Virus record (IMG/VR): IMGVR_UViG_3300037258_000590
Location: 124,001 to 188,000 of that record
Reading direction: 5' to 3' (one strand)
Length of the DNA stretch: 64,000 nt
Shown here: in pieces, positions 14,790-30,366 of the stretch
Numbering within the stretch: the first letter of the stretch is position 1
How the letters are laid out: each line of letters starts with the position of its first letter
The notes under the pieces: generated by a model
The model's database searches: none
Told to the model about the DNA's origin: nothing
What the model saw: the letters and a program-made list of their open reading frames with translations, nothing else
Position numbers and translations under genes: made by a program

Positions 14790-15125
14790 TCACCGGAAGT
14801 TCCTGGCCCCTGCAGGCGACGGCGGCCGGAGCTGAACAGCCAGCAGCTGGAGCTGATCGGCCAGCGCAGCCAGTTCCTCCCGGGCGAACCGCTCGCCAGC
14901 CCCGGTCAGCCGGTAATACACCCGCAGCGGGCGCCGCAGCGCGACCGGATCAGCCTGCTCGCGTTCTGAAATGAGCAGGCCTGCGGCTTCCAGGCGATTC
15001 AGGATCGGGAACAGCGTCCCGGAGCGCATGTCAAGATCGGCGCACAAGCCGGTTCCGTATCGCGGGAGCGCTGGGTCGTTCAGGAACGCCCGCAGTGGCT
15101 TCGCCGAACTGACGGTTAGCTTCAC
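14790..15125 (-). CDS. PadR-family transcriptional regulator
   Basis: RYGTGLCADLDMRSGTLFPILNRLEAAGLL...RRPLRVYYRLTGAG. Confidence 0.85.
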   Translation of the reverse strand: MKLTVSSAKPLRAFLNDPALPRYGTGLCADLDMRSGTLFPILNRLEAAGLLISEREQADPVALRRPLRVYYRLTGAGERFAREELAALADQLQLLAVQLRPPSPAGARNFR

Positions 15126-15172
15126 ACCCCCATTGTAGCCATCCGTAAAAGCCTCCAGCTGGAACATCACGG

Positions 15173-15230
15173 TGTCGGCCGCACTGTCGGGCAGGCTGTC
15201 GGCCGCACTGTCGGCCGCACTGTCGGGCAA
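15173..15230. repeat. Five tandem 12-bp units TGTCGG(C/G)C(G/A)(C/G)(A/G)C
   Basis: Direct reading; immediately upstream of the PadR gene. Confidence 0.85.
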
Positions 15231-15454
15231 GTACCGGGCAGCGCCCTGTCGGGTGTCGTGCGCCCAGCTCGGATGGCAGCGCGACCCCGCATACCCGGGC
15301 CGGCGGCGGGCCCATCCGACAGGCGACAGCACGACGCTCCTGCCAGGCATTACCCGACGTCAAGAGCGGCTCAGGAATGCCCGGAAGTAGTTAGCACAGC
15401 TAAACACCGCGCTGAGTAGCCAGACGACCACAAAATACCCCTGACCTGGAGCTT

Positions 15455-15692
15455 TAGAACACCTGTACGAAAAACTCGGCACCGTTCACATAACAGCCAG
15501 GTAACGCCCTGGAAGGCCTAGCTCGGGCGGCGTGTCGCCTTACACATAGCTTTACCATGACAGACTTTTTCTAACACGTATTCGAACGTTCCGCACGCGG
15601 TAATTTTCCGCGGGGGCAGAAACGCGTGAGGCAGGCATCCCCGCAGGCGCGCACCAAAAAATCGAACATTTGTACACGAAACATACATTCGA
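15455..15692. promoter_or_regulatory. Four LexA(SOS)-box-like sites
   Basis: TAGAAC-ACCT-GTACGA 15455, TCTAAC-ACGT-ATTCGA 15570, TCGAAC-ATTT-GTACAC 15662, CGAAAC-ATAC-ATTCGA 15677 vs actinobacterial TCGAAC-N4-GTTCGA; 2-3 mismatches each. Confidence 0.45.
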
Positions 15693-15706
15693 TTTCTACA
15701 CGGCTG

Positions 15707-15834
15707 CCATTAGCCTCGCTAACTAAGCCATTAGCTAGGCTAACTACATGGGGGGTCCCGCTCCATTAGCGCGGCTAACTAAGCCATTAGCGAGGCTAAC
15801 TACATGGGGGTCCCGCTCCATTAGCGCGGCTAAC
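15707..15834. promoter_or_regulatory. Array of five palindromes CCATTAGC-N3-GCTAAC
   Basis: TTAGC cores at 15710, 15731, 15766, 15787, 15821 (spacing 21, 35, 21, 34 bp); spacers CTC, TAG, GCG, GAG, GCG. Confidence 0.7.
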
Positions 15835-15977
15835 AGTTGCCCGTAGGCACGTACAGCTACCTGGTCGCAAGATCGCCAGACGCACCCCCATGACAACCGC
15901 ACCGTGACAACCATCCATACCGGCGGCAATCGTGACGGTAACCACACAACGCCCGACGCTGGCAGGAGAGCATGCGT

Positions 15978-16028
15978 GTCACCAGCCACCGTCAACCAGC
16001 CACCGTCACCAGCCACCGTCACCAGCCA
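15978..16028. repeat. Four tandem 13-14 bp units GTCACCAGCCACC
   Basis: Direct reading. Confidence 0.85.
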
Positions 16029-16184
16029 GCTCATCGGCAATACCGACATACCGGACATGCCTCTATACGGCTCTGAGTTGGCCGCTAACGGCTTGCACCC
16101 CCCGGTTGGCCGTATCACCCCACCTCTATGCTCTTATGCGTTTTGGCTGGTCAGGAGGCATGTTTAGCGAGCAACCAGGGCAGT

Positions 16185-16352
16185 GTGGCCGCGATGCCGC
16201 GCGACCAGGCCAAGCAGCCGTGGCCGCGATGCCGCGCGACCAGGCCAAGCAGCCGTGGCCGCGATGCCGCGCGACCAGGCCAAGCAGCCGTGGCCGCGAT
16301 GCCGCGCGACCAGGCCAAGCAGCCGTGGCCGCGATGCCGCGCGACCAGGCCA
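16185..16352. repeat. 4.8 identical tandem 35-bp units GTGGCCGCGATGCCGCGCGACCAGGCCAAGCAGCC
   Basis: Units start at 16185, 16220, 16255, 16290, 16325; no spacers; length not a multiple of 3. Confidence 0.95.
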
Positions 16353-16854
16353 GACACGTACCCTGCCCGATATCGGGCAAGGTGTGACGGAGATCACAAA
16401 AGTCACATAACAGCAGGTCAAAGCCATGTTGATCATGAGATTCCCACTAGTCGGAGCATTGTCACTTGATACCGCATAGGACGGTGTGCGACATTGGGGA
16501 CTCAATCAAATTTCATACCGAGACGGCGCGCGGTGCGAAGATCGGACGCGCTTAGCTCGCCGGCCGGAAAATTCAATAGTGAGGAGTAGGCCGGCAAACG
16601 CGCGGTTGAGCATGGTTCTCAGATTGCCACGATGCCGCACATGCGAACTACCGGCCGTAATCACGGGTGACTCTGCCCACGTACCTAGACGCGTAGCGAT
16701 TAGGTACGGCACGGGGCGCGGATGGCTAGCAACCATCGCGCGCACCAATGAAATTTCCAGGCCAGCTCTTGGCGTGTCCCGTTCTACCGCGCACCTCGCG
16801 CCCACGGTGACCAGATGATCTATCCGCCGGCCGGCCTGGCTTGCACGACATGCA

Positions 16855-16974
16855 CCGTCTGTTGGTGGCGGACCATGGCACGCACAGTGACGATTCCGCA
16901 AGGGCCGGCCTTCAGTGGTCCGTTGCACTTGCTTACCCGCACGCCGCGCACCATGGCCGGCCACGGCCAGATGG
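16855..16974 (+). repeat. Hairpin motif B copy 1
   Basis: CCGTCTG-TTG-GTGGCGGACCATGG...CCATGGCCGGCCAC-GGC-CAGATGG. Confidence 0.6.
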
Positions 16975-17021
16975 ATTGAGCCGGCCGCCAGCACCCAACC
17001 GCAAGATCAGGAGTCCGCATT

Positions 17022-17126
17022 ATGTCCACCCCCATGTTCTGGGAAATTACCGCCGCGATTGTCCTGACCGTATTCACCGGAATGTTTGTCTTGCCCGTAC
17101 TCAGCGCGTACCGCAAGCAGCGTTAG
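17022..17126 (+). CDS. 34 aa membrane peptide
   Basis: CAGGAG RBS; MSTPMFWEITAAIVLTVFTGMFVLPVLSAYRKQR. Confidence 0.55.
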   Translation: MSTPMFWEITAAIVLTVFTGMFVLPVLSAYRKQR

Positions 17127-17173
17127 ACCCCGTGCATCAACCCGTTCACCAACCCAGATCAGGAGAAACCGTC

Positions 17174-18058
17174 ATGACCAGCAAGCCCAACACCAGCAAG
17201 CCCAACACCAGCAAGCCCAACACCAGCAAGCCCAACACCCCTGCCAAGCCGAACACCAGCAAGCCCAACACCAGCAAGCCCAACACCCCTGCCAAGCCGA
17301 ACACCAGCAAGCCCAACACCCCTGCCAAGCCGAAGATCGACCTGACCGCGTACAACAGCGCCGTCCGCACCGCTCGGGCCGCTGTTAAGCGCGCCGGTAT
17401 CGCCAACTGGGTTATCGGTGACGCCGCGCTTACCGTGGGCACCAAATACTCAGAGAACAAGCTCGGACAGTTTGCCGATGACATCGGAGTTGAGCTGCCA
17501 AGCGTGCGGAACATGCGCACCGTGAGCGCGGCGTACCAGGCCGACGCCATCGCTCGTGATCTCCAGTCATGGACGGTCTACGGGGTGTTCGCCTCTCAGG
17601 ATGACCGGTACGCGCTTATCGCGGCCGGCAATGACGGTAAGCCCTGGTCTGTGTCGGCCGCGCGTGCGCTGGTCAAGGGCCGGAATGAGTCGGCCGAGTC
17701 GCCGGCGGAAATGCCGGGCGGATCCGAGTCGGACGAGTCGCCGGCGGAAGTGTCGGATCTGGAGAAGGCCAGGGCCGAAGTTCAGCGGCTCGAAGGTGAA
17801 TTGCTGAAGGCACGCGCCAAGCTGGCCAAGCTGGAAGCTGGCATCAAGCAGCAACTTCCGATGCTGGCCGCTGACGGTACCGACTCGCTTGCGGCCACGG
17901 TTCCGGCGCCGATCCAGCACAGTGAACGCAGTGTGCCCGCACACGTGGCCGGCGACTTTCACGCCGCGTGCAAGCAGTGCCAGGCCGCTAAGGCATCTGC
18001 CACGGTGACCGAAATCAGCACGCCGCGCCGCGCGCGCAGTCGTAAGACTGCCGCATAA
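17174..18058 (+). CDS. Putative DNA-binding protein (LmbU-like HTH) with N-terminal (S/A)KPNT repeats
   Basis: About 10 KPNT repeats, then NWVIGDAA...YSENKLGQFADDIG...VRNMRTVSAAY...SWTVY; coiled coil and terminal CxxC. Confidence 0.55.
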   Translation: MTSKPNTSKPNTSKPNTSKPNTPAKPNTSKPNTSKPNTPAKPNTSKPNTPAKPKIDLTAYNSAVRTARAAVKRAGIANWVIGDAALTVGTKYSENKLGQFADDIGVELPSVRNMRTVSAAYQADAIARDLQSWTVYGVFASQDDRYALIAAGNDGKPWSVSAARALVKGRNESAESPAEMPGGSESDESPAEVSDLEKARAEVQRLEGELLKARAKLAKLEAGIKQQLPMLAADGTDSLAATVPAPIQHSERSVPAHVAGDFHAACKQCQAAKASATVTEISTPRRARSRKTAA

Positions 18059-18073
18059 CCCAGTCAGAACCTC

Positions 18074-18137
18074 CCGTCTGATGGTGGCCGGTCACAGTGC
18101 AGCGCTGCCTGTACCGTGACCGGCCACGGCCAGACGG
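18074..18137 (+). repeat. Hairpin motif B copy 2
   Basis: CCGTCTG-ATG-GTGGCCGGTCAC...GTGACCGGCCAC-GGC-CAGACGG. Confidence 0.7.
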
Positions 18138-18165
18138 CCGGAACCAAGATCAGGAGAAGGCACCC

Positions 18166-18420
18166 GTGAGTTTGCTAGACAGATCCGACGCACCACGCAC
18201 GCGGCGAGACGTGTCTGACTACGCCGTTGACATGCCGGTCATGGACGGGCCGTACGGCAACACTGCCGATCATGCGGCCGGCCACCGGCCAGATGCCCGG
18301 GATTTTGAACTTTTCGCGGAAGCATCCCTTACTCACAGTAAAACCCTAGCGGACACGCTCCCGTTGCTACGGCCAACAACGGCCACCTGTACCCGTTGCG
18401 GCCCGACATGCGATCACTGA
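18166..18420 (+). CDS. Hypothetical protein
   Basis: CAGGAG RBS, GTG start. Confidence 0.5.
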   Translation: MSLLDRSDAPRTRRDVSDYAVDMPVMDGPYGNTADHAAGHRPDARDFELFAEASLTHSKTLADTLPLLRPTTATCTRCGPTCDH

Positions 18421-18581
18421 TGAACTACACAATTCTGCGCACATGGTCGGACGGCCGGACACGATGGTTCACGGTCGCATGGTCGGACGGGCGGCGTACC
18501 ACGCATTCCCTGCCCGCTTAACGCCCCGCAACATTCTGACCAGTCAGCAATTCGGGCAGCTCTCAAGCAGGAGGCTTATCC

Positions 18582-19034
18582 ATGCGCACCAATGGCCGGC
18601 ACGTACGCGGCGTTATCCCGCCCGTGAACGGTAAGACGTTCGCAGCATTGCCGTTTATCGCCGGCGTCATACTGGGAGCAATCGCGGCGTTCACGCTAGC
18701 CGTAATGCCGGCGAACGCTGTAGCGCGCACCTCGCTGGCCACGGCCACGATAAGGTGCACCTTGGACGGCGGAGGATCCATAGCAGCCGGCGAGGTAGCG
18801 CACACTGATACCGGAACGTGGGCTTGCACCGAAGACAGAACACTCGTCCGCGCGCTCACGTGGCACCACCTCACGCACCTTTGCCACGCGCGTACCGTCC
18901 CGTGTACACGGGTTCCGGTTGCGGTACGCCGCGAGCTAGCCCTAGGCGGCCGGCCGGCGTTGCTGGTCATCGGTGCCACATCGTGGATTTATGTCCGCGC
19001 AGGCACGTGGGGTCTGGCGCTGTATGAGAGCTGA
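18582..19034 (+). CDS. Membrane/secreted hypothetical protein
   Basis: CAGGAGG RBS; hydrophobic segments. Confidence 0.6.
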   Translation: MRTNGRHVRGVIPPVNGKTFAALPFIAGVILGAIAAFTLAVMPANAVARTSLATATIRCTLDGGGSIAAGEVAHTDTGTWACTEDRTLVRALTWHHLTHLCHARTVPCTRVPVAVRRELALGGRPALLVIGATSWIYVRAGTWGLALYES

Positions 19035-19082
19035 CCCCGGTAGCGAACGAGTACAACCCTCCGACTAGTCGGAGCATCTCCC

Positions 19083-19146
19083 CCGTCTGATGGTGGCCGG
19101 CCACGGTGTGACACGCGCTCGCATCGTGGCCGGCCACGGCCAGACG
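19083..19146 (+). repeat. Hairpin motif B copy 3
   Basis: CGTCTG-ATG-GTGGCCGGCCAC...GTGGCCGGCCAC-GGC-CAGACG. Confidence 0.7.
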
Positions 19147-19173
19147 ACCAGTAGCTAACGGCAGGAAACAATC

Positions 19174-19530
19174 ATGACTGGACACCTCCTCATTACCCGC
19201 GACACCCACGTAACCGTACGCACGGAGAAGATACGGACCTGGAACCCGGCCGCCGGTGAATGGGTGCTGACTACGGTACCTGTACCAGAGCCAGCGCCCC
19301 GACGCAGGCCAGCTGCACGTCGCGCGCCACGCGTAGGCGCACCGCGTAACCTGGCCGGCCTGTCTGATGGCGCACCAATCCCGTCGTGGTGGCGCTATAC
19401 CGCGTTCGCTCCTGGCACGCCGCTAGCCGACATGCGCAGCTATCTCCCGGCGCCGGCCATGCGTACGCACCGCGCGGCGGCGGTAGTACCAGCATCGCCA
19501 GAGGTGTACGCCCCGCCGCTCGCGCGCTGA
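19174..19530 (+). CDS. Hypothetical protein
   Basis: CAGGAA RBS; array orientation. Confidence 0.6.
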   Translation: MTGHLLITRDTHVTVRTEKIRTWNPAAGEWVLTTVPVPEPAPRRRPAARRAPRVGAPRNLAGLSDGAPIPSWWRYTAFAPGTPLADMRSYLPAPAMRTHRAAAVVPASPEVYAPPLAR

Positions 19531-19581
19531 AACGCTCCCGAAGCTCCGACCAGTCAGAACATCCAAGACAGGAGTCCGTAA

Positions 19582-19764
19582 ATGGTTTTCCGCATCGTCA
19601 TGGCCGCGATGGCCGCGCTCATCGCAGGTCTCGCCATCAGCAGCGCCATCATGTTGGTCGTCGTGGGCGGCGACAAACCGCTGCACCACACGTACGCCTG
19701 TGACTTCTCCCGTGATTACCGGCAGGAAGTGCACTTGCCTCCGGCCGCTTGCAACACGCCTTAA
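19582..19764 (+). CDS. Small membrane protein
   Basis: GACAGGAG RBS; one TM segment. Confidence 0.6.
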   Translation: MVFRIVMAAMAALIAGLAISSAIMLVVVGGDKPLHHTYACDFSRDYRQEVHLPPAACNTP

Positions 19765-19843
19765 CCGGGCTGTGCCAGTCGCACATTGCGTTAAGCCAGA
19801 AGCTCCAACCAGTCAGAACATCACCAGTTAGGGGATAACGATC

Positions 19844-20302
19844 ATGACTGCTGTGCCAAGCGTCATCGAGTACAGCATCGACGGGGGCCGGGCCTGGTTC
19901 CACGGCCGGACCATCGAAGCATGGGTGACCGCGCATAAGGCCACGCTTAGCAACCAGCGGGCCATCGTGCGCGGCTTTGCGCGGCAGGAGCTAGGCGCCG
20001 TCGAAGCGATCACTACCCGCGTGCTGGCGGCGGATGACCCGCGCGGCGTGCTGAACCAGCCGCCCGCGGCCAGGACCTGGACCCACGGCCAGGTTCTCCG
20101 CGCCGTCAGTGACGGTACCAGCCTGGTCACCGATGACCCGCAGCTTGGCGCTTGCGAACGTGAAACCGATCTAGTCAGCATGGCCGGCCGGGCGATCATG
20201 GCCATCCTGGCAGACCCGTCCGTCACGCTAGACACCGTGATGGACACCGATTACGCGGGCGGCGCGGCACACGTGCGCACGTGGTGGGACGGCTGGCGCT
20301 AA
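19844..20302 (+). CDS. Hypothetical protein
   Basis: AGGGGA RBS. Confidence 0.6.
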   Translation: MTAVPSVIEYSIDGGRAWFHGRTIEAWVTAHKATLSNQRAIVRGFARQELGAVEAITTRVLAADDPRGVLNQPPAARTWTHGQVLRAVSDGTSLVTDDPQLGACERETDLVSMAGRAIMAILADPSVTLDTVMDTDYAGGAAHVRTWWDGWR

Positions 20303-20433
20303 GCCGAACCCTCCCACCAGTGGGAGCTTACCGTCAGTAATCCACCAGACAGGAGCAATCGAGATGCCCGCTTACAACGACAACCCGGCTGTGACCGGCT
20401 CAGGTCACCTACCCATGGTCGAGAGATAAGCCC

Positions 20434-20718
20434 ATGTTTTTCAATGAAATACCGGACTCCGAAATTACCGGCTTCGCCAGCAAATCCGGGCTTTTCTACG
20501 AGTTCAGCGATTTCGTCGTCCTGTTGCATGGCGGCACCTACTACTGGTCCTCGGACAGTGGATGCTCGTGCCCTAGTCCGTTCGAGTCCCACCAATTCCC
20601 CGATGACTTCGGATCAGGGAACGCCGTCCAGGCGCTCAATGCCCTGGATGAATGGAGCCAGGGCACTCCGGTCGATGACGACGGCTTGCGTACCCGGCTA
20701 ATAAGCGCGCGGGCCTAG
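20434..20718 (+). CDS. Actinophage-type conserved protein
   Basis: YYWSSDSGCSCPSPFE motif recalled from actinophage hypothetical proteins. Confidence 0.6.
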   Translation: MFFNEIPDSEITGFASKSGLFYEFSDFVVLLHGGTYYWSSDSGCSCPSPFESHQFPDDFGSGNAVQALNALDEWSQGTPVDDDGLRTRLISARA

Positions 20719-20762
20719 ACCACCCACCCGTCACAGGCAGCCCGGCGACCAGCCAGCAATTA

Positions 20763-20849
20763 GGCGAAACGTTCCCACTGGTCGGAGCTTTCCGGCCACG
20801 CGGGACGTCCACGGGAGGCTGACCACCCCGTGCCGAAGATGCCAGGTCA
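20763..20849 (+). ncRNA. Type II hammerhead ribozyme HH1 (core CCGAAGA)
   Basis: GGC-GAAA; stem III ACGTTCC/GGGACGT; GUC site after 20809; stem I CACGGG/CCCGTG; CCGAAGA-T-GCC; pseudoknot TGACC/GGTCA. Confidence 0.75.
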
Positions 20850-20868
20850 CCAGACAGGAGCGAATGCA

Positions 20869-20982
20869 ATGGACGATAACCGCACAGACAGCCCCGGCCA
20901 AGGTTCCCGCCGGCCCGCGCTGGACACGTACGCCGACAGGGTGGCCGCCGCGGAAACCGTCATAGCCAATAACGGCTGGTAA
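20869..20982 (+). CDS. 37 aa peptide
   Basis: GACAGGAG RBS after HH1. Confidence 0.45.
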   Translation: MDDNRTDSPGQGSRRPALDTYADRVAAAETVIANNGW

Positions 20983-21024
20983 TCGCCGGAAGATGCCGGA
21001 TAACACAGAGCAGGAGCTGTACCA

Positions 21025-21426
21025 ATGATCACCCGCGATGACGCGCTGACCGCCGGGGAATTCCACGAGGAGCACGAGCCGGCCGGCAAGGTCTACGCCT
21101 GGCGGCGTAACGGCCAGACGCAGATCACGATGACCCGCCCGGACGATTTCCGCGTACCGGTCACGTACGGCCTGCGATCTCACCACCAGATCACGCCGGA
21201 CAACGCGCACCGCTTCCACCGCGCGGACCAGTGCCTGACGCTACGCGTCCGCGTAGCCATCCCGGACGGCGGCGGCGAATGGTACGGGATCGTGATCGAA
21301 GAATTGCTGGCAGACAACGCCGGCTACGGCGTCACGCGCGTGCACGTAACCACACGCGGAGCATCGCGCTACCGCGTCGGCTCACAGGTCGACGTCCCGA
21401 CCAAGCGACTGACCTACCTGCAGTAA
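21025..21426 (+). CDS. Phage-type conserved protein
   Basis: WRRNGQTQ...RPDDFRVPVTYGL...ITPDNAHRFH motif; stop TAA abuts HH2. Confidence 0.7.
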   Translation: MITRDDALTAGEFHEEHEPAGKVYAWRRNGQTQITMTRPDDFRVPVTYGLRSHHQITPDNAHRFHRADQCLTLRVRVAIPDGGGEWYGIVIEELLADNAGYGVTRVHVTTRGASRYRVGSQVDVPTKRLTYLQ

Positions 21427-21514
21427 GGCGAAACGTTCCCACTGGTCGGAGGTTGCTCCGGCCGGAGGGGGCGTCCACGGGCGCTGACCTTCCCGTGCCG
21501 ATGATGCCAGGTCA
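21427..21514 (+). ncRNA. Type II hammerhead ribozyme HH2 (core CCGAUGA)
   Basis: Stem III ACGTTCCC/GGGGGCGT; GUC after 21475; stem I CACGGG/CCCGTG; pseudoknot TGACC/GGTCA. Confidence 0.78.
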
Positions 21515-21536
21515 ACCAGATGAGGAGACACCAGCC

Positions 21537-21773
21537 ATGCGCGGATTCATGTTCCCGGCCACGGCCGCCATCCTGCTGCGCGAGCGGACGTGGATGCCCG
21601 ACGTGGCGATCGCCAGCTGGCTCCGCAACTACGGCAAGTCGGGAGAGCGGTTCTTCATCCAGACCACGCGGCCCGGCAACGATCACTACCTGGTCCAGCC
21701 GGCTCCAGGCGGGTTCTGCATCGTGCCGTGCCGGATGGCCCCGGGCACGCCGGCCGGGTACGTCCTGGCCTGA
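21537..21773 (+). CDS. Hypothetical protein
   Basis: GAGGAG RBS; between HH2 and HH3. Confidence 0.6.
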   Translation: MRGFMFPATAAILLRERTWMPDVAIASWLRNYGKSGERFFIQTTRPGNDHYLVQPAPGGFCIVPCRMAPGTPAGYVLA

Positions 21774-21783
21774 CTGTCCGCCA

Positions 21784-21868
21784 GGCGAAACGTTCCGACC
21801 AGTGGGAGATTCCGGCCGGCCGGAACATCCGCGGGCAATGACCTCCCCGCGCTGACGATGCCAGGTCA
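21784..21868 (+). ncRNA. Type II hammerhead ribozyme HH3 (core CUGACGA, AUC site)
   Basis: Stem III GTTCCG/CGGAAC; site after 21829; stem I CGCGGG/CCCGCG; pseudoknot intact; C15.2:A16.2 mismatch. Confidence 0.75.
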
Positions 21869-21888
21869 CGAAAGCTCAGGAGACAGAC

Positions 21889-22410
21889 ATGCCCGCATAC
21901 GACGACAACCCGGCCGTGACCGGGGATTACGTCTGGATCACGGCTGACGGCACGGCCGGGCGGCGTTCCCGCGCGGCGCAGGTCAACGCCGCCAAGCGCG
22001 CCTACGAACGCAGCCACGGCGTGACGCTGACGCTGCTTGCCAGGAGCTACAGCGAAACGTACGGCTTCTTGCACCGGTCAGCGTTCCGGTACGAGATCGG
22101 CCGGCCCGGCCAGTCTTTCACGATCACGTACATGTCCGTGCGATGCGAGGTATGGGACACCGAGCCGGGCACGTACCCGACCATGGCCGCAGCGCAAGCG
22201 CACGTACGGTCAGCGTTCCGAACCCTGTCATCATACTGCCGGGTACGGATCCACGCGCCGGCCGGCCGGCAGAGCCAGGTCGGCTCGCGTACCGGTCTCG
22301 GCCCCTGGTACTTCGAGCCGTGCCCGGCGGGCGGGCGCGTGACCCTGCGCTTCCCGGGATTCCCGCCCGTTACCTGCGCCGGCCCCTCCATCACCGCTAT
22401 CGACGCGTAA
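21889..22410 (+). CDS. Hypothetical protein
   Basis: CAGGAG RBS; stop abuts HH4. Confidence 0.65.
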   Translation: MPAYDDNPAVTGDYVWITADGTAGRRSRAAQVNAAKRAYERSHGVTLTLLARSYSETYGFLHRSAFRYEIGRPGQSFTITYMSVRCEVWDTEPGTYPTMAAAQAHVRSAFRTLSSYCRVRIHAPAGRQSQVGSRTGLGPWYFEPCPAGGRVTLRFPGFPPVTCAGPSITAIDA

Positions 22411-22495
22411 GGCGAAACGTTCCGGCCTGCCGGTTCTTCCCGCCGGCCGGAACGTCTGTGAGAGCTGACCTCCTCACACTGACGATGCCAGGTCA
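22411..22495 (+). ncRNA. Type II hammerhead ribozyme HH4 (core CUGACGA)
   Basis: Stem III ACGTTCCGGCC/GGCCGGAACGT; GUC after 22456; covaried stem I TGTGAG/CTCACA; pseudoknot intact. Confidence 0.88.
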
Positions 22496-22514
22496 CCAGA
22501 GATCAGGAGACACC

Positions 22515-22685
22515 ATGCCGAACGCCACCAGTGACCCGCGCGCCGTCGCCCGGTTCGCGACCATGCGCCGCATCCAGGCGGCTGACGCGCCGGCCCGGTA
22601 CACGCGCAGCCGTCGCCTGGCGGCCATGGGGAAGGGTTACCACGGACCGCTGACCCGCGCGGAGCTAGCCCGTCGAACGGCGTAA
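22515..22685 (+). CDS. 56 aa basic peptide
   Basis: CAGGAG RBS. Confidence 0.55.
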   Translation: MPNATSDPRAVARFATMRRIQAADAPARYTRSRRLAAMGKGYHGPLTRAELARRTA

Positions 22686-22687
22686 CA

Positions 22688-22777
22688 GGCGAAACGTCCC
22701 ACTGATCGGAGGTTACTCCGGCCAGCCGGGACGTCCGCGGGCGCTGAGCACCCCGTACCGAAGAAGATGCCGGATCA
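22688..22777 (+). ncRNA. Hammerhead HH5, degenerate
   Basis: Stem III and GUC (22735) intact; core CCGAAGA followed by extra AGA; weakened stem I and pseudoknot. Confidence 0.5.
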
Positions 22778-22789
22778 CCGGAGGTACAC

Positions 22790-23035
22790 GTGAAAATCCA
22801 GCAAGCCCACTACGACCACATGGTCACGGAGATAAATACAGCTGTAACCAGGATCGGGCCAGATAGGGTGGCCAGCTTCAAGACGCATGTATCGCCGAAA
22901 CGATACCGGTGGGACCTGCTGCGCGCCGCCAACCTCATCCCGTACGTGTGCAGCACGCTCTACCCGTACATGAAGGACGAGCACATAGACACCGCGCTGC
23001 GCCACATCGTAGCCGACCCGTCAAACAAGCTTTAG
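22790..23035 (+). CDS. Phage-type hypothetical protein
   Basis: GGAGG RBS; RYRWDLL...LYPYMKDEHIDTALRHIV. Confidence 0.65.
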   Translation: MKIQQAHYDHMVTEINTAVTRIGPDRVASFKTHVSPKRYRWDLLRAANLIPYVCSTLYPYMKDEHIDTALRHIVADPSNKL

Positions 23036-23058
23036 GCGAAACGTCCGTTCCGCGCCTA

Positions 23059-23134
23059 GGCGAAACGTTCCGATCCTCCCACCGGTCGGAACGTCTACGG
23101 GAGCTGACCTACCCGCACTGAAGATGCCAGGTCA
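23059..23134 (+). ncRNA. Type II hammerhead ribozyme HH6 (core CUGAAGA)
   Basis: Stem III ACGTTCCGA/TCGGAACGT; GUC after 23095; stem I TACGGG/CCCGCA (1 mismatch); pseudoknot intact; a duplicated GGCGAAACGT stub lies at 23035. Confidence 0.82.
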
Positions 23135-23152
23135 CCAGATGAGGAGACGGCT

Positions 23153-23737
23153 ATGAGTGATCGTGAATGGATACCGGCGGCAGACGTCCAGGTCGGCGAC
23201 CAGCTGGCCCACAAGCTGTCGAACACACCGTGGACCTACACGCCGGTTACAGGCTGGTCGGACAAGGTTCTCCACCTCGGGGGCAGCCTCGGGAACGTCA
23301 CGCAGCGCCGGTTCACCGTATCCGGGGCGCCGTGGTGGGTCACCTCAGATGCGGCCAGTCTCTGGCATTCGCTGGACGGGCAAGCACTGGTCCTGAACCT
23401 GGGCAAATACCCCGAGCCTGAACCAATGCCCGAGCCCGAGCCCGAGCCCGAGCCTGTCACGCGCATCGTCCTGGGCGATGACTACTACGGGTTCCGCATG
23501 CCGGTACCGTCCGGCTTCACCGATTACCTGCTGGCCAGCACCGACGATAAATGGGCAGTCCTGGAGTCCATCGGCATCACGCGGCGCGATGACGTCTCCC
23601 CGCTGGCCGCGTGGCGCGACGCGGTAGCCGATGAGACCGGGATTCCCCGCGCGCAGCTAGACCCGGCCCAGGGCGGCGTATTCGACATCGGGTTTACGCC
23701 CGCGTACGTCCGCAAATTCGTGTTCTTCCTGGCCTGA
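23153..23737 (+). CDS. Hypothetical protein with PE-repeat linker
   Basis: GAGGAG RBS; PEPEPMPEPEPEPEP. Confidence 0.65.
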   Translation: MSDREWIPAADVQVGDQLAHKLSNTPWTYTPVTGWSDKVLHLGGSLGNVTQRRFTVSGAPWWVTSDAASLWHSLDGQALVLNLGKYPEPEPMPEPEPEPEPVTRIVLGDDYYGFRMPVPSGFTDYLLASTDDKWAVLESIGITRRDDVSPLAAWRDAVADETGIPRAQLDPAQGGVFDIGFTPAYVRKFVFFLA

Positions 23738-23844
23738 CCCGCAAAGACGTTTCCCGGCCCTTGATCCCCCGAAGCCGGCCGGGACGGCAACCCAGGGGGG
23801 CTAACACCACCCCGCTCAGGATCATGAGACAGGAGACAGCAACC

Positions 23845-24417
23845 ATGATCAAGGTGCTAGTTCAGTCCGTCCCGGACGAAATTCCGGACGGCACGCGCTA
23901 CGAAGTCGCGGCCGGCCTGCCGGGAGACATGACCGGCTGGTTCCAGATCTCACACGCGGGCCTGGTGCTGGCCACGGGCGAGCACAACTACCACGATGAC
24001 AGCGACTTCTACGCAACCGTATGGGACGGCCAGGGGCCGCGCGAGATCACCTACGCCAGCACGCGCGGGTGGACCTATGCCAACAGTGCCACGGCAGACG
24101 CCACGCCGGAGGTACAGGCCGCCTACGGCGCGTGGCGCCAGGCCCGCGCGGGCGAGCGTCAGGCCGCAGCCACGGCAGCGGAGGCGGCCACGCCACGCGC
24201 CGGCAAGACAGTCCGGGTGGTCAGAGGCCGCAAGGTGCCCGTGGGCACTGTGGCGGAAGTCGTCTGGTACGGCGAGGGTAAGCGGTTCAGCCGCCATGCG
24301 CCAGTCCCGATGCGCGTTGGCCTGCTGACCGGCGACGAGCGCGTGTTTACTGATGCGGCCAACGTCGAAGTCGTGACGGCCGATGAGCCAGGCCACCCGA
24401 TGAGGAGACACCTGTGA
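23845..24417 (+). CDS. Phage-type conserved protein
   Basis: GACAGGAG RBS; HNYHDDSDFYATVWD and GKTVRVVRGRKVPVGT motifs. Confidence 0.7.
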   Translation: MIKVLVQSVPDEIPDGTRYEVAAGLPGDMTGWFQISHAGLVLATGEHNYHDDSDFYATVWDGQGPREITYASTRGWTYANSATADATPEVQAAYGAWRQARAGERQAAATAAEAATPRAGKTVRVVRGRKVPVGTVAEVVWYGEGKRFSRHAPVPMRVGLLTGDERVFTDAANVEVVTADEPGHPMRRHL

Positions 24418-24755
24418 AAGTCATCAAAGAGATTGACCACGATCCCCGCACTGTTCGCGAGGTCCGTGTGTTCGTCCGTCAGTACATTTTCGTTGACGGT
24501 GTATCCAGCTACGACGTCCACCTGTCCGAGCTGCGGTACCGCAGCTCAGACGGTGAGCTGACCGACTGCCTGACACTGGACGACAGCTTTAGCCACGTGC
24601 CCGGAGACGCTGAAATAGAAGCCCTGCCGTACATCGCTCCCAGCGTACGGCGCGAGGCCCCCGGGGTGTTCTACATCCTGACCGGGCCTTACCGGAAAGG
24701 CCCGTACGCAAACCGCAGGGAGGCTAACGCGGACATCAGGGCTGGCCGCTGGTAA
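24414..24755 (+). CDS. Hypothetical protein
   Basis: GAGGAG RBS; GTGA overlap. Confidence 0.6.
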   Translation: MKVIKEIDHDPRTVREVRVFVRQYIFVDGVSSYDVHLSELRYRSSDGELTDCLTLDDSFSHVPGDAEIEALPYIAPSVRREAPGVFYILTGPYRKGPYANRREANADIRAGRW

Positions 24756-24779
24756 CCCCCTGCGCACTACCACTAGCCA

Positions 24780-24855
24780 GGCGAAACATTTCGATTCTCC
24801 CACTGGTCGGAACGTCCGCGAGAGCTAACCTGCCCGCGCCGATGATGCCAGGTCA
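24780..24855 (+). ncRNA. Type II hammerhead ribozyme HH7 (core CCGAUGA)
   Basis: Stem III ACATTTCGA/TCGGAACGT (1 mismatch); GUC after 24816; stem I CGCGAG/CCCGCG; loop TAACC vs tail GGTCA. Confidence 0.68.
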
Positions 24856-24876
24856 CGAGATAAGGAGACAGGTTCT

Positions 24877-25169
24877 GTGATCTACCAGGTCGGCCGGTTC
24901 ACCCGCGACCAGTTCACATCGGACGCCGCTTTCCACGCGGCGATCAGGTGCCAGATGATCAGTTGCCCCGAGCTGTACCCCGAGCTGGCAGAGGCCGCCG
25001 CCGAGACCGAGCGGCTGGCACCCAAGATCCGCAAGACCGGAAAGAAGACATCATGAACCCCTACCTGGTCCGCGACGAGAACGGCGAGCCGGTCATGCGG
25101 TTGGTCGAACGTGACCGCTACGGCCGGTTCTGCCGACCTTACTACGCCTACATCTGGAAGACATCATGA
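24877..25169 (+). CDS. Two coupled small ORFs (24877-25056 and 25053-25169)
   Basis: AAGGAG RBS; ATGA overlaps; both end KTS. Confidence 0.5.
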
Positions 25170-26473
25170 GCGTCAGCCTTAGCGCGGCAGCATCGGTCCG
25201 GCAGCACGCGGAGCGCCTGGAGAAGGATATCCGCAACCAGGCCAAAACCGTAGCCTACGACCTGACCATGTGCGCCCAAGCCGTGTTACGCGTGCGATCA
25301 GCCGGTCAAGTAACCCAGGAAGAAGAGAAGGCTATGGAAGCTAGCAAACTGAGCGCCGCCTACACCAGCGGCCCGCCGCACCCGCTCGCCGCCCGGCCGC
25401 GCGAGTACACCGGCCCGATGGCCCCGGACCACAAGCTGGGCGGCATCTACGCCATCATGGACCGGCACGGCATGCTGCCGGACGGACCGGGCGGGATCGC
25501 CTGCCTGCGGTGCGCGAAGCCGCTCAACGCTGACGGCGGCCACCCCGCTGAGCTGTACGCCGGGACATACAACGGCCTGTGCTACCCGTGCACCTCGGCG
25601 CCGGCATTCGTGGCCCGCACGGCCGTCCTGGACGGCGCCCGGGAGGTGTCCTGGCCGCCGCACTGCCCGTCGTGGCGCCGGGACCGCGAGAAGCACATTG
25701 CCTATGAAGGCTGCCCGGCCTGCGACGGCCTAGGCATCACCCTGGGCACCCGGACCTACAGCAGCGGCGGCCGGTCATGCGAGCCGTGCCGGACCCGGTT
25801 CTGCGGCCACCCGGTACGCGCGGCGGCCAGCCGGTGGAACGAGCAGGCCATGCGGTCTTGCCAGGCCGCCTTCGACCAGGCCATCGACCAGGCCGCGGGC
25901 GTGCCAGCACGATGCACCAGGAAACGTCGCACCGAGCTGCGTGAGGCGTTCATCGGCCTCGCCGGGAACGGCCGCTCGCCGGAATGCGAAGCGCTGCGCC
26001 TGGCTCACCTGGCTGGCTACTGGCGCATCCGCGCGCTTATCCGCGCGCACTTCGAGGCGCGAGGCTGGAACCAGTGGTCAGATACCAGCAACGATGAGGC
26101 GTGGGCCAGGGCGTACTGCACCTGGCGCGGACTGGATTATGACGCGCTGGCCGCCGGCGAGCCCCAGCCCGGACCGCCTGAGCCCCAGCCCGAACCGCCT
26201 GGGCCGGAAAACCCGCAAGCCGGGCGGATCGCCGTGCTACGGGCCCTGACCTTCGAGCGGGCCGAGGAGTGGTGGCGTACCGGCCGGATCAGTACCGACG
26301 AGTGGGAGGCGTTCGGTTACGCCTGGCGGCGCGGCGCCGTCCGCTTCTCCGGCGTCGGCGCCGGTTTCGAGCACCCCGTCTCGCAAAAGGTGCGCGAGCT
26401 GGGCAACGCCATCATGGGCGGCAATGCACCAGGCACCTGCCCGTGCCCGGCGGGCGAGAACTGCACCCTGTGA
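25166..26473 (+). CDS. Multi-CxxC hypothetical protein
   Basis: CLRC, CYPC, CPAC, CEPC motifs; ATGA overlap. Confidence 0.65.
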   Translation: MSVSLSAAASVRQHAERLEKDIRNQAKTVAYDLTMCAQAVLRVRSAGQVTQEEEKAMEASKLSAAYTSGPPHPLAARPREYTGPMAPDHKLGGIYAIMDRHGMLPDGPGGIACLRCAKPLNADGGHPAELYAGTYNGLCYPCTSAPAFVARTAVLDGAREVSWPPHCPSWRRDREKHIAYEGCPACDGLGITLGTRTYSSGGRSCEPCRTRFCGHPVRAAASRWNEQAMRSCQAAFDQAIDQAAGVPARCTRKRRTELREAFIGLAGNGRSPECEALRLAHLAGYWRIRALIRAHFEARGWNQWSDTSNDEAWARAYCTWRGLDYDALAAGEPQPGPPEPQPEPPGPENPQAGRIAVLRALTFERAEEWWRTGRISTDEWEAFGYAWRRGAVRFSGVGAGFEHPVSQKVRELGNAIMGGNAPGTCPCPAGENCTL

Positions 26474-26514
26474 AGCGACCCAGCATCACCCCGTAACTAC
26501 CGAAAGGCCCTGAA

Positions 26515-26763
26515 ATGTCTGACCGGTCTGAGCTGGCTACTCCATCCGGGTACGCCGGCGTTGAATACACGGACGGTAAGGTGCACGCCATCGACCTGGA
26601 CACGCTGCACGGTGAGACGCCGGCGTACCCGCGCGGGATGCCGTTGTGGCGCGAACCCGTGGTGTGCGGGGCCGCTAGTGGCGTGTCCAGCGATGAGGGC
26701 GGTCCTGCCGCGTTGCACCGCAAGACGCTCACCTGCTGGATGTGCGTCTCCATCCTGGCCTGA
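26515..26763 (+). CDS. Hypothetical protein
   Basis: Array orientation; LTCWMC. Confidence 0.55.
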   Translation: MSDRSELATPSGYAGVEYTDGKVHAIDLDTLHGETPAYPRGMPLWREPVVCGAASGVSSDEGGPAALHRKTLTCWMCVSILA

Positions 26764-26817
26764 GATCTTCCCACTGGTCGGAGCTTCCGGCCGGGCTGCT
26801 TACGACAGGAAAACCAC

Positions 26818-27060
26818 ATGACTGAATTCATCAGCGGCTACCGGGACCGCGCGGGCATTGACTCACGCGCCAATTCCGCGCTACTGCGCATTGCCGCGAT
26901 CAGCGCGGACGTGTACGTGCCGGCCGCCGTGCGTCTCGCGCAGGTCGCGCAGGTCATGGCGGGCGAGCCGATCCTCACGGACCCGTGCCCGGCCGCACGC
27001 ACCGTACGCGCGGAGCTTGCCGGCCGCACCGCTCTGCAAGACAGAGGGCTGACCTCATGA
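26818..27060 (+). CDS. Hypothetical protein
   Basis: GACAGGAA RBS. Confidence 0.55.
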   Translation: MTEFISGYRDRAGIDSRANSALLRIAAISADVYVPAAVRLAQVAQVMAGEPILTDPCPAARTVRAELAGRTALQDRGLTS

Positions 27061-27109
27061 AACTACACGCGGTAATCGAGCAGCCGTCACTGACCGTGGA
27101 ACAGCAACA

Positions 27110-27589
27110 ATGACAGGAGATCCCGTGAACCAGCCCGTACCTCCGCGCAAGCGGACCCTTTCCGACCTGGAGATCAACCGGTACGCCATGTTCCTGCCGT
27201 ACCTGCCAGCCGAGGAAAACAACGACGCGGAAGCGATGCCGTGCATCGTGCTGGGCAGCGACGAGGACGGCAACGGCGGCGTGCAGGTGTACGCCTACTC
27301 CGAGAACGGCGTAGTCCGGATCAGCGTGCACACCTACTCAGCCGGACCAGACGAGAACGGGGACGGCCCGTGGGCTTACTACGACCAGGGGCATGAGCGC
27401 GTGATCCCGGTCGTCATCGACGTCTACGACGCAGTGCCTGTAGGGCAGGCGACAGCTGAGGTGAACCCGCTCGGGCAGCCGCTCTGGGTGCCGTCAGCCG
27501 GGCTGGCCTACGCGGGCGTGCCACTGGACCAGATCCCGGACGACGGCCAGCGTGCCGCCGTGGCGCGTCACCGCGAGGCGGACCTGTGA
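27110..27589 (+). CDS. Hypothetical protein with C-terminal LAYAGVPLDQIPDDGQRAAV module
   Basis: Module shared with 51384-51731. Confidence 0.6.
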   Translation: MTGDPVNQPVPPRKRTLSDLEINRYAMFLPYLPAEENNDAEAMPCIVLGSDEDGNGGVQVYAYSENGVVRISVHTYSAGPDENGDGPWAYYDQGHERVIPVVIDVYDAVPVGQATAEVNPLGQPLWVPSAGLAYAGVPLDQIPDDGQRAAVARHREADL

Positions 27590-27780
27590 GCGGCAGGGAC
27601 AAGCTCAACGCCCAACCGGACGAGGACCCGGCACTGAACACGCGTATCGCAGAGCTGGAAGCCGAACAGCAGGCCGCGATCACGGCTGGCACGATCAGCG
27701 CATGGGAGCGGACGCCGGCATGCGCAGAACTGGACCGGCTGCGCGACGAGCGCGGCTACCGGCCGGGTACTGCCGGATAG
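27586..27780 (+). CDS. Small hypothetical protein
   Basis: GTGA overlap; stop overlaps HH8. Confidence 0.55.
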   Translation: MSGRDKLNAQPDEDPALNTRIAELEAEQQAAITAGTISAWERTPACAELDRLRDERGYRPGTAG

Positions 27781-27864
27781 GCGAAACGTCCAGCCGGCAG
27801 GAAACTTCCGGCTCGCAGGAACATCCATGAGAGCTGACCGTCTCACGGAGATGATGCCAGGTCA
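27780..27864 (+). ncRNA. Hammerhead HH8 with mutated core (GAGAUGA), probably inactive
   Basis: Stem II, pseudoknot and stem I CATGAG/CTCACG retained; C3 and U4 substituted. Confidence 0.55.
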
Positions 27865-27881
27865 CCACGACAGGAGCTGAC

Positions 27882-28436: not shown

Positions 28437-28489
28437 GATTACGGTCAGCCCGCGACAAAAGCACAGCAGTGAAAAAGGAAGAGACGATC

Positions 28490-28894: not shown

Positions 28895-28991
28895 CCGCTG
28901 ACCGACAGGCCGCGCAAGCGCGCCGCGGCGCTAGCGCAACGTTCTAACCGGTCGGAGCTTTTCCGGCCGCTCAACGACAGGAGACTGATGC

Positions 28992-30356: not shown

Positions 30357-30366
30357 CAGTCCATCA

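What the first reader, a model, noticed from the sequence alone, without database searches (positions are those of the whole stretch)
16855..19146. Second unnamed structured motif, three copies, at the head of the array
Seen: CGTCTG-(A/T)TG-GTGGC(C)GG...CCGGCCAC-GGC-CAGA(C/T)G at 16855, 18074 and 19083. It is a long hairpin with a conserved 3x3 internal loop and a freely variable apical region, each copy lying in an intergenic gap shortly before an RBS. Conserved unpaired bases with a variable apex suggest a functional RNA or DNA element (processing site, protein-binding site or recombination site).
Basis: seen in the sequence. Interest (0 to 1): 0.6.

Follow-up and report, generated by a model that had tools for sequence, protein, structure and literature searches.

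The report
Phage intercistronic hairpins in hammerhead slots
Three copies of a long RNA hairpin sit in the leader and first gene junctions of a giant soil actinophage's early operon, in the same slots where related phages and the rest of this operon carry self-cleaving hammerhead ribozymes, so they are most likely ordinary mRNA processing or stability hairpins and not a new kind of RNA.

Summary
There are exactly three + strand copies in the 210-kb phage genome (window 16855-16974, 18074-18137, 19084-19146), plus a relic 3' arm at 18276-18295. Each has a 6-7 bp basal stem, a WUG/GGC 3x3 loop and a long upper stem, and lies between a stop codon or the leader and an RBS.

Covariance models built from one subset detect the other (38-43 bits). 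The leader copy has orthologues in two related phages, with 15 of 44 pairs changed compensatorily, so the structure is under selection. The loop sequence, however, is conserved only within this genome.

The downstream "array" consists of type II hammerhead ribozymes. In other relatives the same two slots hold hammerheads: the leader slot in L080, L081 and L083, and the slot after the 294-aa gene in L082/L083, where a 14-bp version of the same hairpin precedes the ribozyme.

None of the three copies is followed by a U-tract. The phage encodes no RNase III, tyrosine recombinase or Y1 transposase, and the motif has no Rfam hit.

Best reading: these are cis-acting RNA hairpins that punctuate the early polycistronic mRNA, probably as host RNase III sites and/or end-protecting stems. 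No RNA data exist, so cleavage is inferred. This is a new member of a known kind, of moderate interest.

The parts
16855..16974 (+). Copy 1, the leader copy: a 120-nt irregular hairpin. Base CCGUCUG/CAGAUGG (one G.U pair), loop UUG/GGC, a long upper stem with a conserved internal loop (ACGAUUCCGC / CUUACCCGC) and apical loop CUUCAGUG.
   Evidence: R1 scores it 38.1 bits. Orthologues at L037 10397-10522(-) and L038 5839-5973(+) show 15 of 44 pairs with compensatory changes.
18074..18137 (+). Copy 2: a 64-nt hairpin, 16 nt after the stop codon of the 294-aa gene and 10 nt before the extended RBS AGATCAGGAG.
   Evidence: 91.3 bits; 42.2 bits with the model built from orthologues only.
19084..19146 (+). 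Copy 3: a 63-nt hairpin, 50 nt after the stop codon of the 150-aa gene and 28 nt before ATG 19174. Its upper stem GGCCGGCCACGGUG../..CGUGGCCGGCC is the same as the post-gene hairpins of L083 and L086.
   Evidence: (96.1 bits). A strain variant in run X4 shows 0 differences over 19054-19294.
18276..18295 (+). Relic 3' arm (GGCCGGCCAC-C-GGCCAGAUG) without a matching 5' arm. It does not fold as a hairpin.
   Evidence: expected 0.24 per genome; no hairpin fold.
19059..19074 (+). Short palindrome CUCCGACUAGUCGGAG just upstream of copy 3. The same palindrome followed by GCAUCU precedes the homologous hairpin in L083.
17004..17013 (+). Extended RBS AGATCAGGAG downstream of copy 1. It recurs at 17156 and 18147, and with one mismatch before many genes of the hammerhead array.
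   Evidence: 16 matches against 2.7 expected.
16380..16854 (+). Conserved non-coding leader upstream of copy 1, alignable in G001, G002, L080 and L081. It contains the palindrome TGTGA-N6-TCACA at 16383-16400 and the block GGUGA(C/G)UCUGCC.
18138..19083 (+). The segment bracketed by copies 2 and 3 (ORFs 18166-18420, 18420-18521, 18582-19034). G001 and G002 lack it at this position: there the homologue of gene 19174-19530 directly follows the 294-aa gene and one hairpin.

Best explanation
The three copies are cis-acting RNA hairpins in the + strand early polycistronic transcript of an uncultured ~210-kb actinophage. They belong to a set of interchangeable 'junction modules' that this phage group places between a stop codon (or the 5' leader) and the next RBS. 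The set comprises short GC hairpins, long hairpins, type II hammerhead ribozymes and possibly tRNA-like pieces.

Proposed mechanism. The RNA folds into a ~28-29 rung helix interrupted 6-7 bp above its base by a small internal loop. This is long enough to be cut by the host's double-strand-specific RNase III. The 11-14 bp hairpins found at the same slot in relatives are too short for that enzyme. Cleavage, or failing that the stem itself, separates and end-protects the neighbouring cistrons. That is the same job the self-cleaving hammerheads do at the following junctions.

What is shown: the family is real, the structure is under selection, and it occupies the same slots as hammerheads. What is inferred: that it acts as + strand RNA, and that RNase III cleaves it.

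Sub-estimates: RNA processing or stability element of some kind, about 0.6-0.65; specifically an RNase III site, about 0.35.
For: 1. The family is genuine, shown by reciprocal covariance-model detection.
2. Pairing is selected. Among the 3 orthologues of copy 1, 93.8% of cells are paired and 15 pairs changed on both sides, with 0 of 500 shuffles as high and 25-40% pairing when partners are slid. In copies 2 versus 3, pairs 21/49, 30/40 and 31/39 of alignment A3 changed on both sides. The T/A change in copy 2 keeps pairing between the arms but destroys the palindrome within each arm, which argues against two dsDNA operators.
3. Slot equivalence. The downstream array consists of type II hammerheads: RF02276 scores 39.6 bits at 38024-38108 and 19-35 bits for 8 more. 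At the copy 1 slot, L080 (28.9 bits), L081 (31.2) and L083 (30.2) carry a hammerhead. At the copy 2 slot, L082 and L083 carry a 14-bp hairpin with the same core GGCCGGCCACGGUG followed by a hammerhead at 31.1 bits. Hammerheads are strand-specific, so the + strand RNA crosses these slots.
4. The stem III insert of the L080/L081 leader hammerheads shares ACGAUUCCGC and flanking similarity with the leader hairpin.
5. Helix length. Copies 2 and 3 have 28-29 rungs and no other cleavage module, with only 10-14 nt to the RBS region. The 14-bp L083 hairpin is accompanied by a ribozyme.
6. None of the three copies is followed by a U-tract, so they are not canonical intrinsic terminators.
7. Clustered hammerheads that cut phage-related polycistronic RNAs are documented (PMC3088659).
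Against: No RNA data exist: all sequencing runs that hold this phage are soil DNA metagenomes, so neither transcription nor cleavage has been seen.

Thermodynamics do not settle the strand. The three leader hairpins fold 3-8 kcal/mol better on the - strand, with more G.U pairs there, while copy 3 and a second G001 hairpin fold better on the + strand.

Several relatives (G001, G002, L080, L081, L084) have only a short perfect hairpin at the post-gene slot and no recognisable cleavage module, so cleavage may not be required there.

The phage encodes no RNase III and its host is unknown.

The 100% identity of the base and loop between copies 2 and 3, despite a diverged apex, suggests sequence-specific recognition or gene conversion. 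RNase III alone does not explain that.
Confidence: 0.5

Rival explanations
1. The hairpins are uncleaved structural elements: 3'-end or 5'-end protecting stems, or weak attenuators, which work only through their stability. The basal extension and internal loop have no specific role.
For: Every relative has a strong GC hairpin right after the 294-aa gene, with unrelated sequences. That is the pattern expected when only the structure matters. In L083 the hairpin sits just 5' of a hammerhead, where it would end up near the 3' end of the cleaved upstream RNA.
Against: There is no U-tract, so efficient intrinsic termination is unlikely. Copy 1 has no upstream cistron to protect. The basal extension and loop are kept identical in copies 2 and 3 while the apex diverged, which stability alone does not require.
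Confidence: 0.2
2. The hairpins are a sequence-specific binding site for a phage or host protein that acts on RNA, for example a processive antiterminator (lambda nut or HK022 put type), a translational regulator or a dedicated endoribonuclease. The protein would recognise the conserved base and loop at the head of the early operon.
For: The base and loop are identical among paralogues, while orthologues carry different, co-varying bases. The copies are restricted to the first 2.3 kb of the operon. The apical loop CUUCAGUG is conserved in leader orthologues.
Against: No candidate protein was identified: the neighbouring genes are orphans in Pfam and PHROGs. Relatives manage with hammerheads or plain hairpins in the same slots.
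Confidence: 0.12
3. It is a DNA-level element: a recombination hotspot or module boundary, a cruciform, or the ends of a non-autonomous mobile element. Copies 2 and 3 would then be the duplicated ends of an inserted ~1-kb module.
For: The segment 18138-19083 is bracketed by two directly repeated hairpins and is absent from this position in G001 and G002. There is a relic arm inside it. The fold is equally good on both strands. The divergent intergenic region upstream has iteron-like tandem repeats.
Against: The phage has no tyrosine recombinase and no Y1 transposase. There is no GTTRRRY-type core. DNA contigs from four soil samples show no polymorphism for the insertion. The copies always lie between a stop codon and an RBS on the coding strand, and hammerheads occupy the same slots in relatives.
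Confidence: 0.08
4. It is a decaying hammerhead relic (closing helix plus stem III left after loss of the core and stem I) with no remaining function, copied around by gene conversion.
For: The leader hairpin aligns with the leader hammerheads of L080 and L081, sharing ACGAUUCCGC, a 5' flank CCGYCURUUGG and a 3' tail GCCAGGCCAGGC versus GCCACGGCCAGAC. Its architecture is what a type II hammerhead would leave after that deletion.
Against: Strong compensatory evolution across three lineages shows continuing selection on pairing. Copy 3 is invariant in a strain variant. The protein tree does not polarise hairpin versus hammerhead.
Confidence: 0.06
5. It is a new small self-cleaving ribozyme whose active site is the 3x3 internal loop.
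For: It lies in ribozyme slots, next to an array of hammerheads. That association is how twister-sister, pistol and hatchet were found (my recollection of Weinberg et al. 2015, not checked here).
Against: The loop sequence is not conserved in orthologues. The motif is a simple near-continuous helix (A.C, U.G, G.G) with no tertiary partners. It matches no ribozyme family in Rfam at E up to 10.
Confidence: 0.03

Closest known systems
RNase III processing hairpins between cistrons of phage early mRNAs (the T7 early R0.3-R1.3 sites; from my own knowledge of the literature, not retrieved here)
   Same: They are long, imperfect hairpins with an internal loop. They lie in the leader and between cistrons of a phage early polycistronic transcript, with no U-tract, in several copies at the head of the operon.
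   Different: Cleavage is untested here. The host and its RNase III are unknown. The sequence is unrelated. Here the hairpins alternate with self-cleaving ribozymes in the same operon.
Type II hammerhead ribozymes clustered in phage-related operons (Rfam RF02276; Perreault et al. 2011, PMC3088659)
   Same: They occupy the same intergenic slots, immediately upstream of an RBS, in this operon and in orthologous positions of relatives. There is partial sequence similarity with the stem III and closing helix of the L080/L081 leader hammerheads.
   Different: The hairpins have no GAAA or CUGANGA core, no three-way junction and no stem I. They are not detected by the Rfam model.
ESAS (extended start-associated sequences) of Cluster K mycobacteriophages (Pope et al. 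2011, PMC3203893)
   Same: Both are actinophage intergenic elements made of imperfect inverted repeats with a variable spacer. They lie just upstream of a conserved RBS-associated motif, are present before a subset of genes, have a genome-specific consensus, and their function is still unknown.
   Different: ESAS arms are 17 bp with 4-13 bp spacers and are tied to the SAS GGGATAGGAGCCC. Here the arms are about 26-28 nt with 6-70 nt between them, the RBS motif is AGATCAGGAG, and the phages are unrelated.
Intrinsic (Rho-independent) terminators and 3' stabiliser hairpins
   Same: A GC-rich stable hairpin directly after a stop codon (copies 2 and 3).
   Different: There is no U-tract. Copy 1 precedes the first gene. 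In a relative, a hammerhead lies downstream of the homologous hairpin, which implies read-through.

Membership tests
Hammerhead ribozyme type II (RF02276) | Conserved core CUGANGA ... GAAA and a cleavage triplet (GUC/UH) at a three-way junction | tested here: not met
   cmscan at E up to 10 over 16500-20800 gives no hammerhead hit. The sequence has no GAAA, and the fold is a two-way internal loop.
Hammerhead ribozyme type II (RF02276) | Position in an intergenic slot just upstream of an RBS in these phage operons | tested here: met
   Hammerheads occupy the same slots in L080, L081, L082 and L083 and further along in this window.
RNase III processing site | About 20 bp or more of double-stranded RNA (two helical turns), often with an internal loop | tested here: met
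   Copies 2 and 3 have 28-29 stacked rungs including a 3x3 loop. Copy 1 is longer.
RNase III processing site | Cleavage by RNase III in vivo or in vitro, with 5'-phosphate and 3'-OH ends | not testable with these tools
   No RNA run holds this phage.
RNase III processing site | RNase III available in the infected cell | tested here: inconclusive
   The phage has no PF14622 match. The host is unknown; the portal's best cultured relatives are Gordonia, Mycobacterium and Microbacterium phages at 30-38% identity.
Intrinsic terminator | GC-rich hairpin followed by a U-tract | tested here: not met
   The hairpin is present, but the 10 nt after each copy hold 0-3 scattered T. The terminator scan finds none on the + strand here.
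ESAS of Cluster K mycobacteriophages | 17-bp imperfect inverted repeats, 4-13 bp spacer, immediately upstream of the SAS GGGATAGGAGCCC | tested here: not met
   The arms and spacers are longer, the RBS motif differs, and the definition is taken from PMC3203893. The resemblance is in layout only.
Integron attC site | R''/L''-L'/R' boxes with a GTTRRRY core, extrahelical bases, and a cognate tyrosine integrase | tested here: not met
   The arms have no AAC/GTT core, and the genome has no PF00589 match.
IS200/IS605 or REP/RAYT subterminal hairpins | Imperfect palindromes recognised by a Y1 (HUH) transposase | tested here: not met
   The genome has no PF01797 match. The only TnpB-like gene lies about 45 kb away and has no similar hairpin.
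Other self-cleaving ribozyme classes in Rfam (twister, twister-sister, pistol, hatchet, HDV-like, hairpin) | Match to the family covariance model | tested here: not met
   cmscan at the gathering threshold over the whole window and at E up to 10 over 16500-20800 gave only microRNA-type noise.

The most novel reading that the evidence does not exclude
The hairpin with its 3x3 loop is itself a minimal new RNA-cleaving or RNA-processing motif, either self-cleaving or guided by a dedicated phage factor. It would have replaced hammerheads in the first slots of the operon, making it a new ribozyme-like class found by 'ribozyme-slot' association.
Probability: 0.04. Interest if true: 0.85.

Novelty: new member of a known kind. 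Interest (0 to 1): 0.42.

Why it matters
The biological role of bacterial and phage hammerheads is still poorly understood. This phage group offers a natural experiment. Orthologous intercistronic slots are filled in different lineages by a hammerhead, by a hairpin plus a hammerhead, by a short hairpin, or (in this genome) by a long looped hairpin.

If the long hairpins are RNase III sites, that would show that self-cleaving ribozymes and protein-RNase sites are interchangeable punctuation marks of phage polycistronic mRNAs, and it would give a tractable construct set for testing this.

On its own, the three-copy motif is a lineage-specific hairpin family without demonstrated activity.

Tried and rejected
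- Exact and relaxed pattern scans. Viral contigs gave 0 hits. Genome contigs gave 0 strict hits and 32 loose hits scattered over many phyla, all 27 bits or less with R1, which is chance. A scan with the conserved 3' arm found only G001, G002 and one coding-region chance hit, L075.
- R1 found nothing in five portal-related phage records. R2 found nothing in L080-L083.
- Megablast against cultured phages gave no match.
- The search for related loci with single orphan proteins returned only low-complexity hits or nothing. With the alignment A5 it returned only G001 and G002.
- Pfam and PHROGs on the neighbouring genes gave nothing except a PadR-like regulator upstream.
- Sequencing runs were DNA only. 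Laying contigs showed no insertion polymorphism and no variants in copy 3, while copies 1 and 2 were not covered in the divergent strain.
- Choosing the strand by MFE or G.U counts gave mixed results.
- A possible fourth full copy at 18209-18300 does not fold as a hairpin or align as one. Only its 3' arm is recognisable.
- The protein tree could not polarise hairpin versus hammerhead because it is poorly resolved.
- An N4-like hairpin-promoter reading was considered. No phage RNA polymerase turned up among the 10 proteins scanned. I did not search for one specifically, so this reading stays at low probability and untested.
- ARAGORN calls no tRNA in the T-arm-like segments of L086 and G001.
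Full report
**Source of the window**

The window is bases 124,001-188,000 of a 210,383-bp IMG/VR virus record with direct terminal repeats and about 66% G+C. The record has a portal gene whose best cultured relatives are Gordonia, Mycobacterium and Microbacterium phages at only 30-38% identity. It also has a DUF4192 gene, inteins, a primase-polymerase gene and other phage functions. It is therefore an uncultured large actinophage. It is found in soil metagenomes from four studies.

Genes left of about 15,350 run on the - strand and end with a PadR-like regulator at 14790-15350. From about 17,000 onward a long series of small genes runs on the + strand. Between the two lies about 1.6 kb of non-coding DNA. 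It contains tandem repeats and a conserved palindrome TGTGA-N6-TCACA.

**Observation**

The 5' arm occurs exactly three times in the window. The two-arm pattern occurs three times in the whole genome, always on the + strand. The copies are at 16855-16974, 18074-18137 and 19084-19146.

Z-scores are about -6.4 for copies 2 and 3.

Two covariance models confirm the family independently. A model built from copies 2+3 alone (R1) detects copy 1 at 38 bits, and nothing else in the genome exceeds 19 bits. A model built from copy 1 and its two orthologues (R2) detects copies 2 and 3 at 42-43 bits.

A solitary, slightly damaged 3' arm lies at 18276-18295.

The gaps holding the copies are non-coding, and each ends in an RBS. 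AGATCAGGAG follows copies 1 and 2, and it is a statistically enriched extended RBS.

**Relatives of the phage**

Portal homology identified related phage records. Synteny and direct reading show that G001 (139.6 kb) and G002 (164 kb) carry an orthologue of copy 1. It lies at the same place, at the end of a conserved ~600-nt non-coding leader and just before the first RBS.

The three orthologues share a consensus fold of 44 pairs. Of these, 15 have changes on both sides, 93.8% of cells are paired, no shuffle in 500 reaches the observed values, and slid controls pair at 25-40%. The basal stem co-varies: CGUCUG/CAGAUG in the window, CGUUC/GAACG in G001 and CCGUAC/GUACGG in G002.

All three keep a small helix defect 6-7 bp above the base, but its sequence differs.

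Copies 2 and 3 are identical over the base and loop. Their apex has diverged with compensatory changes. One of those changes keeps pairing between the arms while destroying the palindrome within each arm. This argues for a hairpin and against two double-stranded operators.

**The array and the slots**

Rfam identifies the downstream 'array' as type II hammerhead ribozymes. One copy exceeds the gathering score (38024-38108, 39.6 bits). Eight more with a long stem III insert score 19-35 bits with intact cores. The finding's motif has no Rfam match.

Homologues of the 294-aa protein led to further relatives.

At the slot of copy 1:
- L080, L081 and L083 carry a type II hammerhead, at 28.9, 31.2 and 30.2 bits.
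- L085 carries a long hairpin with the same apical loop CUUCAGUG as the window and G001.

At the slot of copy 2, after the 294-aa gene:
- Every relative has a strong GC hairpin.
- In L083 and L086 it has the same core as the upper stem of copies 2 and 3 (GGCCGGCCACG(G/A)UG ... CCGUGGCCGGCC), but it lacks the basal extension and loop.
- In L082 and L083 this 14-bp hairpin is followed immediately by a hammerhead at 31.1 bits.
- In L086 it is followed by a segment resembling a tRNA T-arm.
- G001, G002, L080, L081 and L084 have only an 11-14 bp hairpin.

The leader hairpin also aligns with the leader hammerheads of L080 and L081: ACGAUUCCGC within stem III, a similar 5' flank and a similar 3' tail. 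The hairpin may therefore be what remains of a type II hammerhead after loss of the core and stem I. A tree of the 294-aa protein is too poorly resolved to polarise this. It shows hairpin-type and hammerhead-type leaders interspersed.

**Rearrangement between copies 2 and 3**

In G001 and G002 the homologue of gene 19174-19530 directly follows the 294-aa gene and a single hairpin. In the window, three ORFs lie between them (18166-18420, 18420-18521, 18582-19034), bracketed by copies 2 and 3. In G002, homologues of the last two ORFs lie downstream of that gene instead. So each new junction received its own hairpin, or the hairpin mediated the rearrangement.

DNA contigs from four soil samples show no polymorphism for this segment.

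**Mechanism**

The hairpins share slots with strand-specific, self-cleaving ribozymes. They always lie between a stop codon or the leader and an RBS on the coding strand, and their pairing is under selection. I therefore read them as RNA elements of the + strand early transcript that punctuate it.

None of the three copies is followed by a U-tract. In L083 a ribozyme downstream of the homologous hairpin implies read-through. Efficient intrinsic termination is therefore unlikely.

Copies 2 and 3 have 28-29 rungs, about two and a half helical turns, with an internal loop. That is the classic form of an RNase III site in phage early mRNAs, and they have no other cleavage module. The 14-bp L083 hairpin does have one. 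My preferred specific mechanism is therefore cleavage by host RNase III and/or end protection.

This step is an inference. The phage encodes no RNase III, the host is unknown and no RNA data exist.

Thermodynamics do not fix the strand. The leader hairpins fold somewhat better on the - strand, and copy 3 folds better on the + strand.

**Rivals**

- Uncleaved stabiliser or attenuator (0.2).
- Sequence-specific protein-binding RNA, such as an antitermination or regulatory site, suggested by the genome-specific identical base and loop (0.12).
- DNA-level recombination or module boundary (0.08). The phage has no tyrosine recombinase or Y1 transposase.
- Functionless hammerhead relic (0.06). The compensatory evolution argues against this.
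- New self-cleaving ribozyme (0.03). The loop is not conserved in orthologues and there is no tertiary complexity.

**Comparison with known systems**

The motif works most like T7-type RNase III intercistronic sites (this comparison rests on my own knowledge, not a paper retrieved here). In layout it resembles the ESAS elements of Cluster K mycobacteriophages, whose function is also unknown. It meets neither family's sequence definition.

It is not a hammerhead, terminator, attC site or IS200/REP hairpin by the tests listed in the membership table.

Clustered hammerheads that cut phage-related polycistronic RNAs are known (PMC3088659).

**Verdict**

This is a real, selected, lineage-specific hairpin family and a new member of the known kind 'intercistronic processing or stability hairpins'. 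Its main interest is the natural interchange with hammerhead ribozymes at orthologous slots.

The reads tool was given 4,001 letters. No alternative genetic code was used. No toxin, effector or animal-virus sequence was involved.

Noticed in passing
window 20747-40300 (e.g. 20762-20851, 21426-21516, 21783-21870, 22410-22497, 22687-22772, 23058-23136, 24782-24847, 30064-30152, 30366-30455, 34723-34800, 38024-38108, 40185-40260): The large intergenic repeat family (the 'array') consists of type II hammerhead ribozymes with a long stem III insert, each directly upstream of an RBS. RF02276 scores 39.6 bits at 38024-38108 and 19-35 bits for the others. At 10 or more copies in about 20 kb, this is an unusually dense ribozyme array. 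G002 has one copy and G001 has none in the parts searched.
   Followed up: partly
window 19537-19563, 19796-19822, 19059-19074, 18533-18548, about 16440-16460; many junctions in L037, L038, L080, L083: A short palindrome TCCGRCC(N2-4)GGYCGGA recurs at most gene junctions in all related phages. It also lies in the conserved promoter-like block and forms the hammerheads' stem III. It could be an operator (stoperator or CIR-like) or a small RNA hairpin.
   Followed up: no
window 15351-16400: The divergent non-coding region holds several tandem repeat sets: 56 nt x2.3 (15707-15834), 13 nt x3.8 (15978-16028), and 35 nt x4.8 at 100% identity (16185-16352). G002 has different tandem repeats at the same place, containing GGCCACGGCCAG. 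They could be iterons of an origin or regulatory binding sites.
   Followed up: no
window 16383-16400, next to the PadR-like gene 14790-15350 (-): A conserved palindrome (A)TGTGA-N6-TCACA(T) is shared with G001 and G002. It lies at the start of the conserved ~600-nt leader and is a likely operator or promoter region of the early operon.
   Followed up: no
genome 95,250-95,520 (L011 15250-15520, - strand), outside the window: Four direct repeats of about 34-36 nt (GGCAACGGAGCCTGAGCTGGGCATGAGGTGCGAC), separated by unique spacers of about 35 nt, lie immediately downstream of a 550-aa TnpB/Cas12f-like gene (PF07282). This is a CRISPR-like mini-array in a phage.
   Followed up: no
genome 75,850-77,577 (L010 15850-17577): A TROVE (Ro60-like) domain protein is encoded by the phage. 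I did not look for a partner Y-RNA-like RNA.
   Followed up: no
L086 960-1010; L037 about 7960-8015 (- strand): Segments with a tRNA T-arm-like sequence (GGTTCGATTCC) and an acceptor-like end lie at gene junctions of relatives. In L086 the segment lies directly after the homologous hairpin. ARAGORN calls no tRNA. They may be tRNA-like processing signals.
   Followed up: partly
window 17177-17320: The 294-aa gene starts with about nine copies of a 15-nt repeat encoding (T/P)SKPN-type units. The homologues have similar low-complexity N-termini of variable length.
   Followed up: no
window 18418-18422: The stop codon of the low-GC3 ORF 18166-18420 overlaps the start codon of the conserved 33-aa gene 18420-18521 (TGATG), and the ORF has a consensus AGATCAGGAG RBS. 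It is therefore probably translated despite its weak codon bias.
   Followed up: partly
window 54319-54433, 61092-61192, 61514-61557, 62088-62285, 63223-63362: Another family of intergenic direct repeats (families D7, D12 and D14, with the core CAGGGGGGAATCCGG) lies further downstream. I did not examine it.
   Followed up: no
genome-wide (L007 569-3451, L010 19197-, L012 1545-4136 and 7012-9819; window 55596-57668): Several large proteins carry LAGLIDADG or homing-endonuclease domains. This suggests multiple inteins, possibly including one in the portal protein.
   Followed up: no
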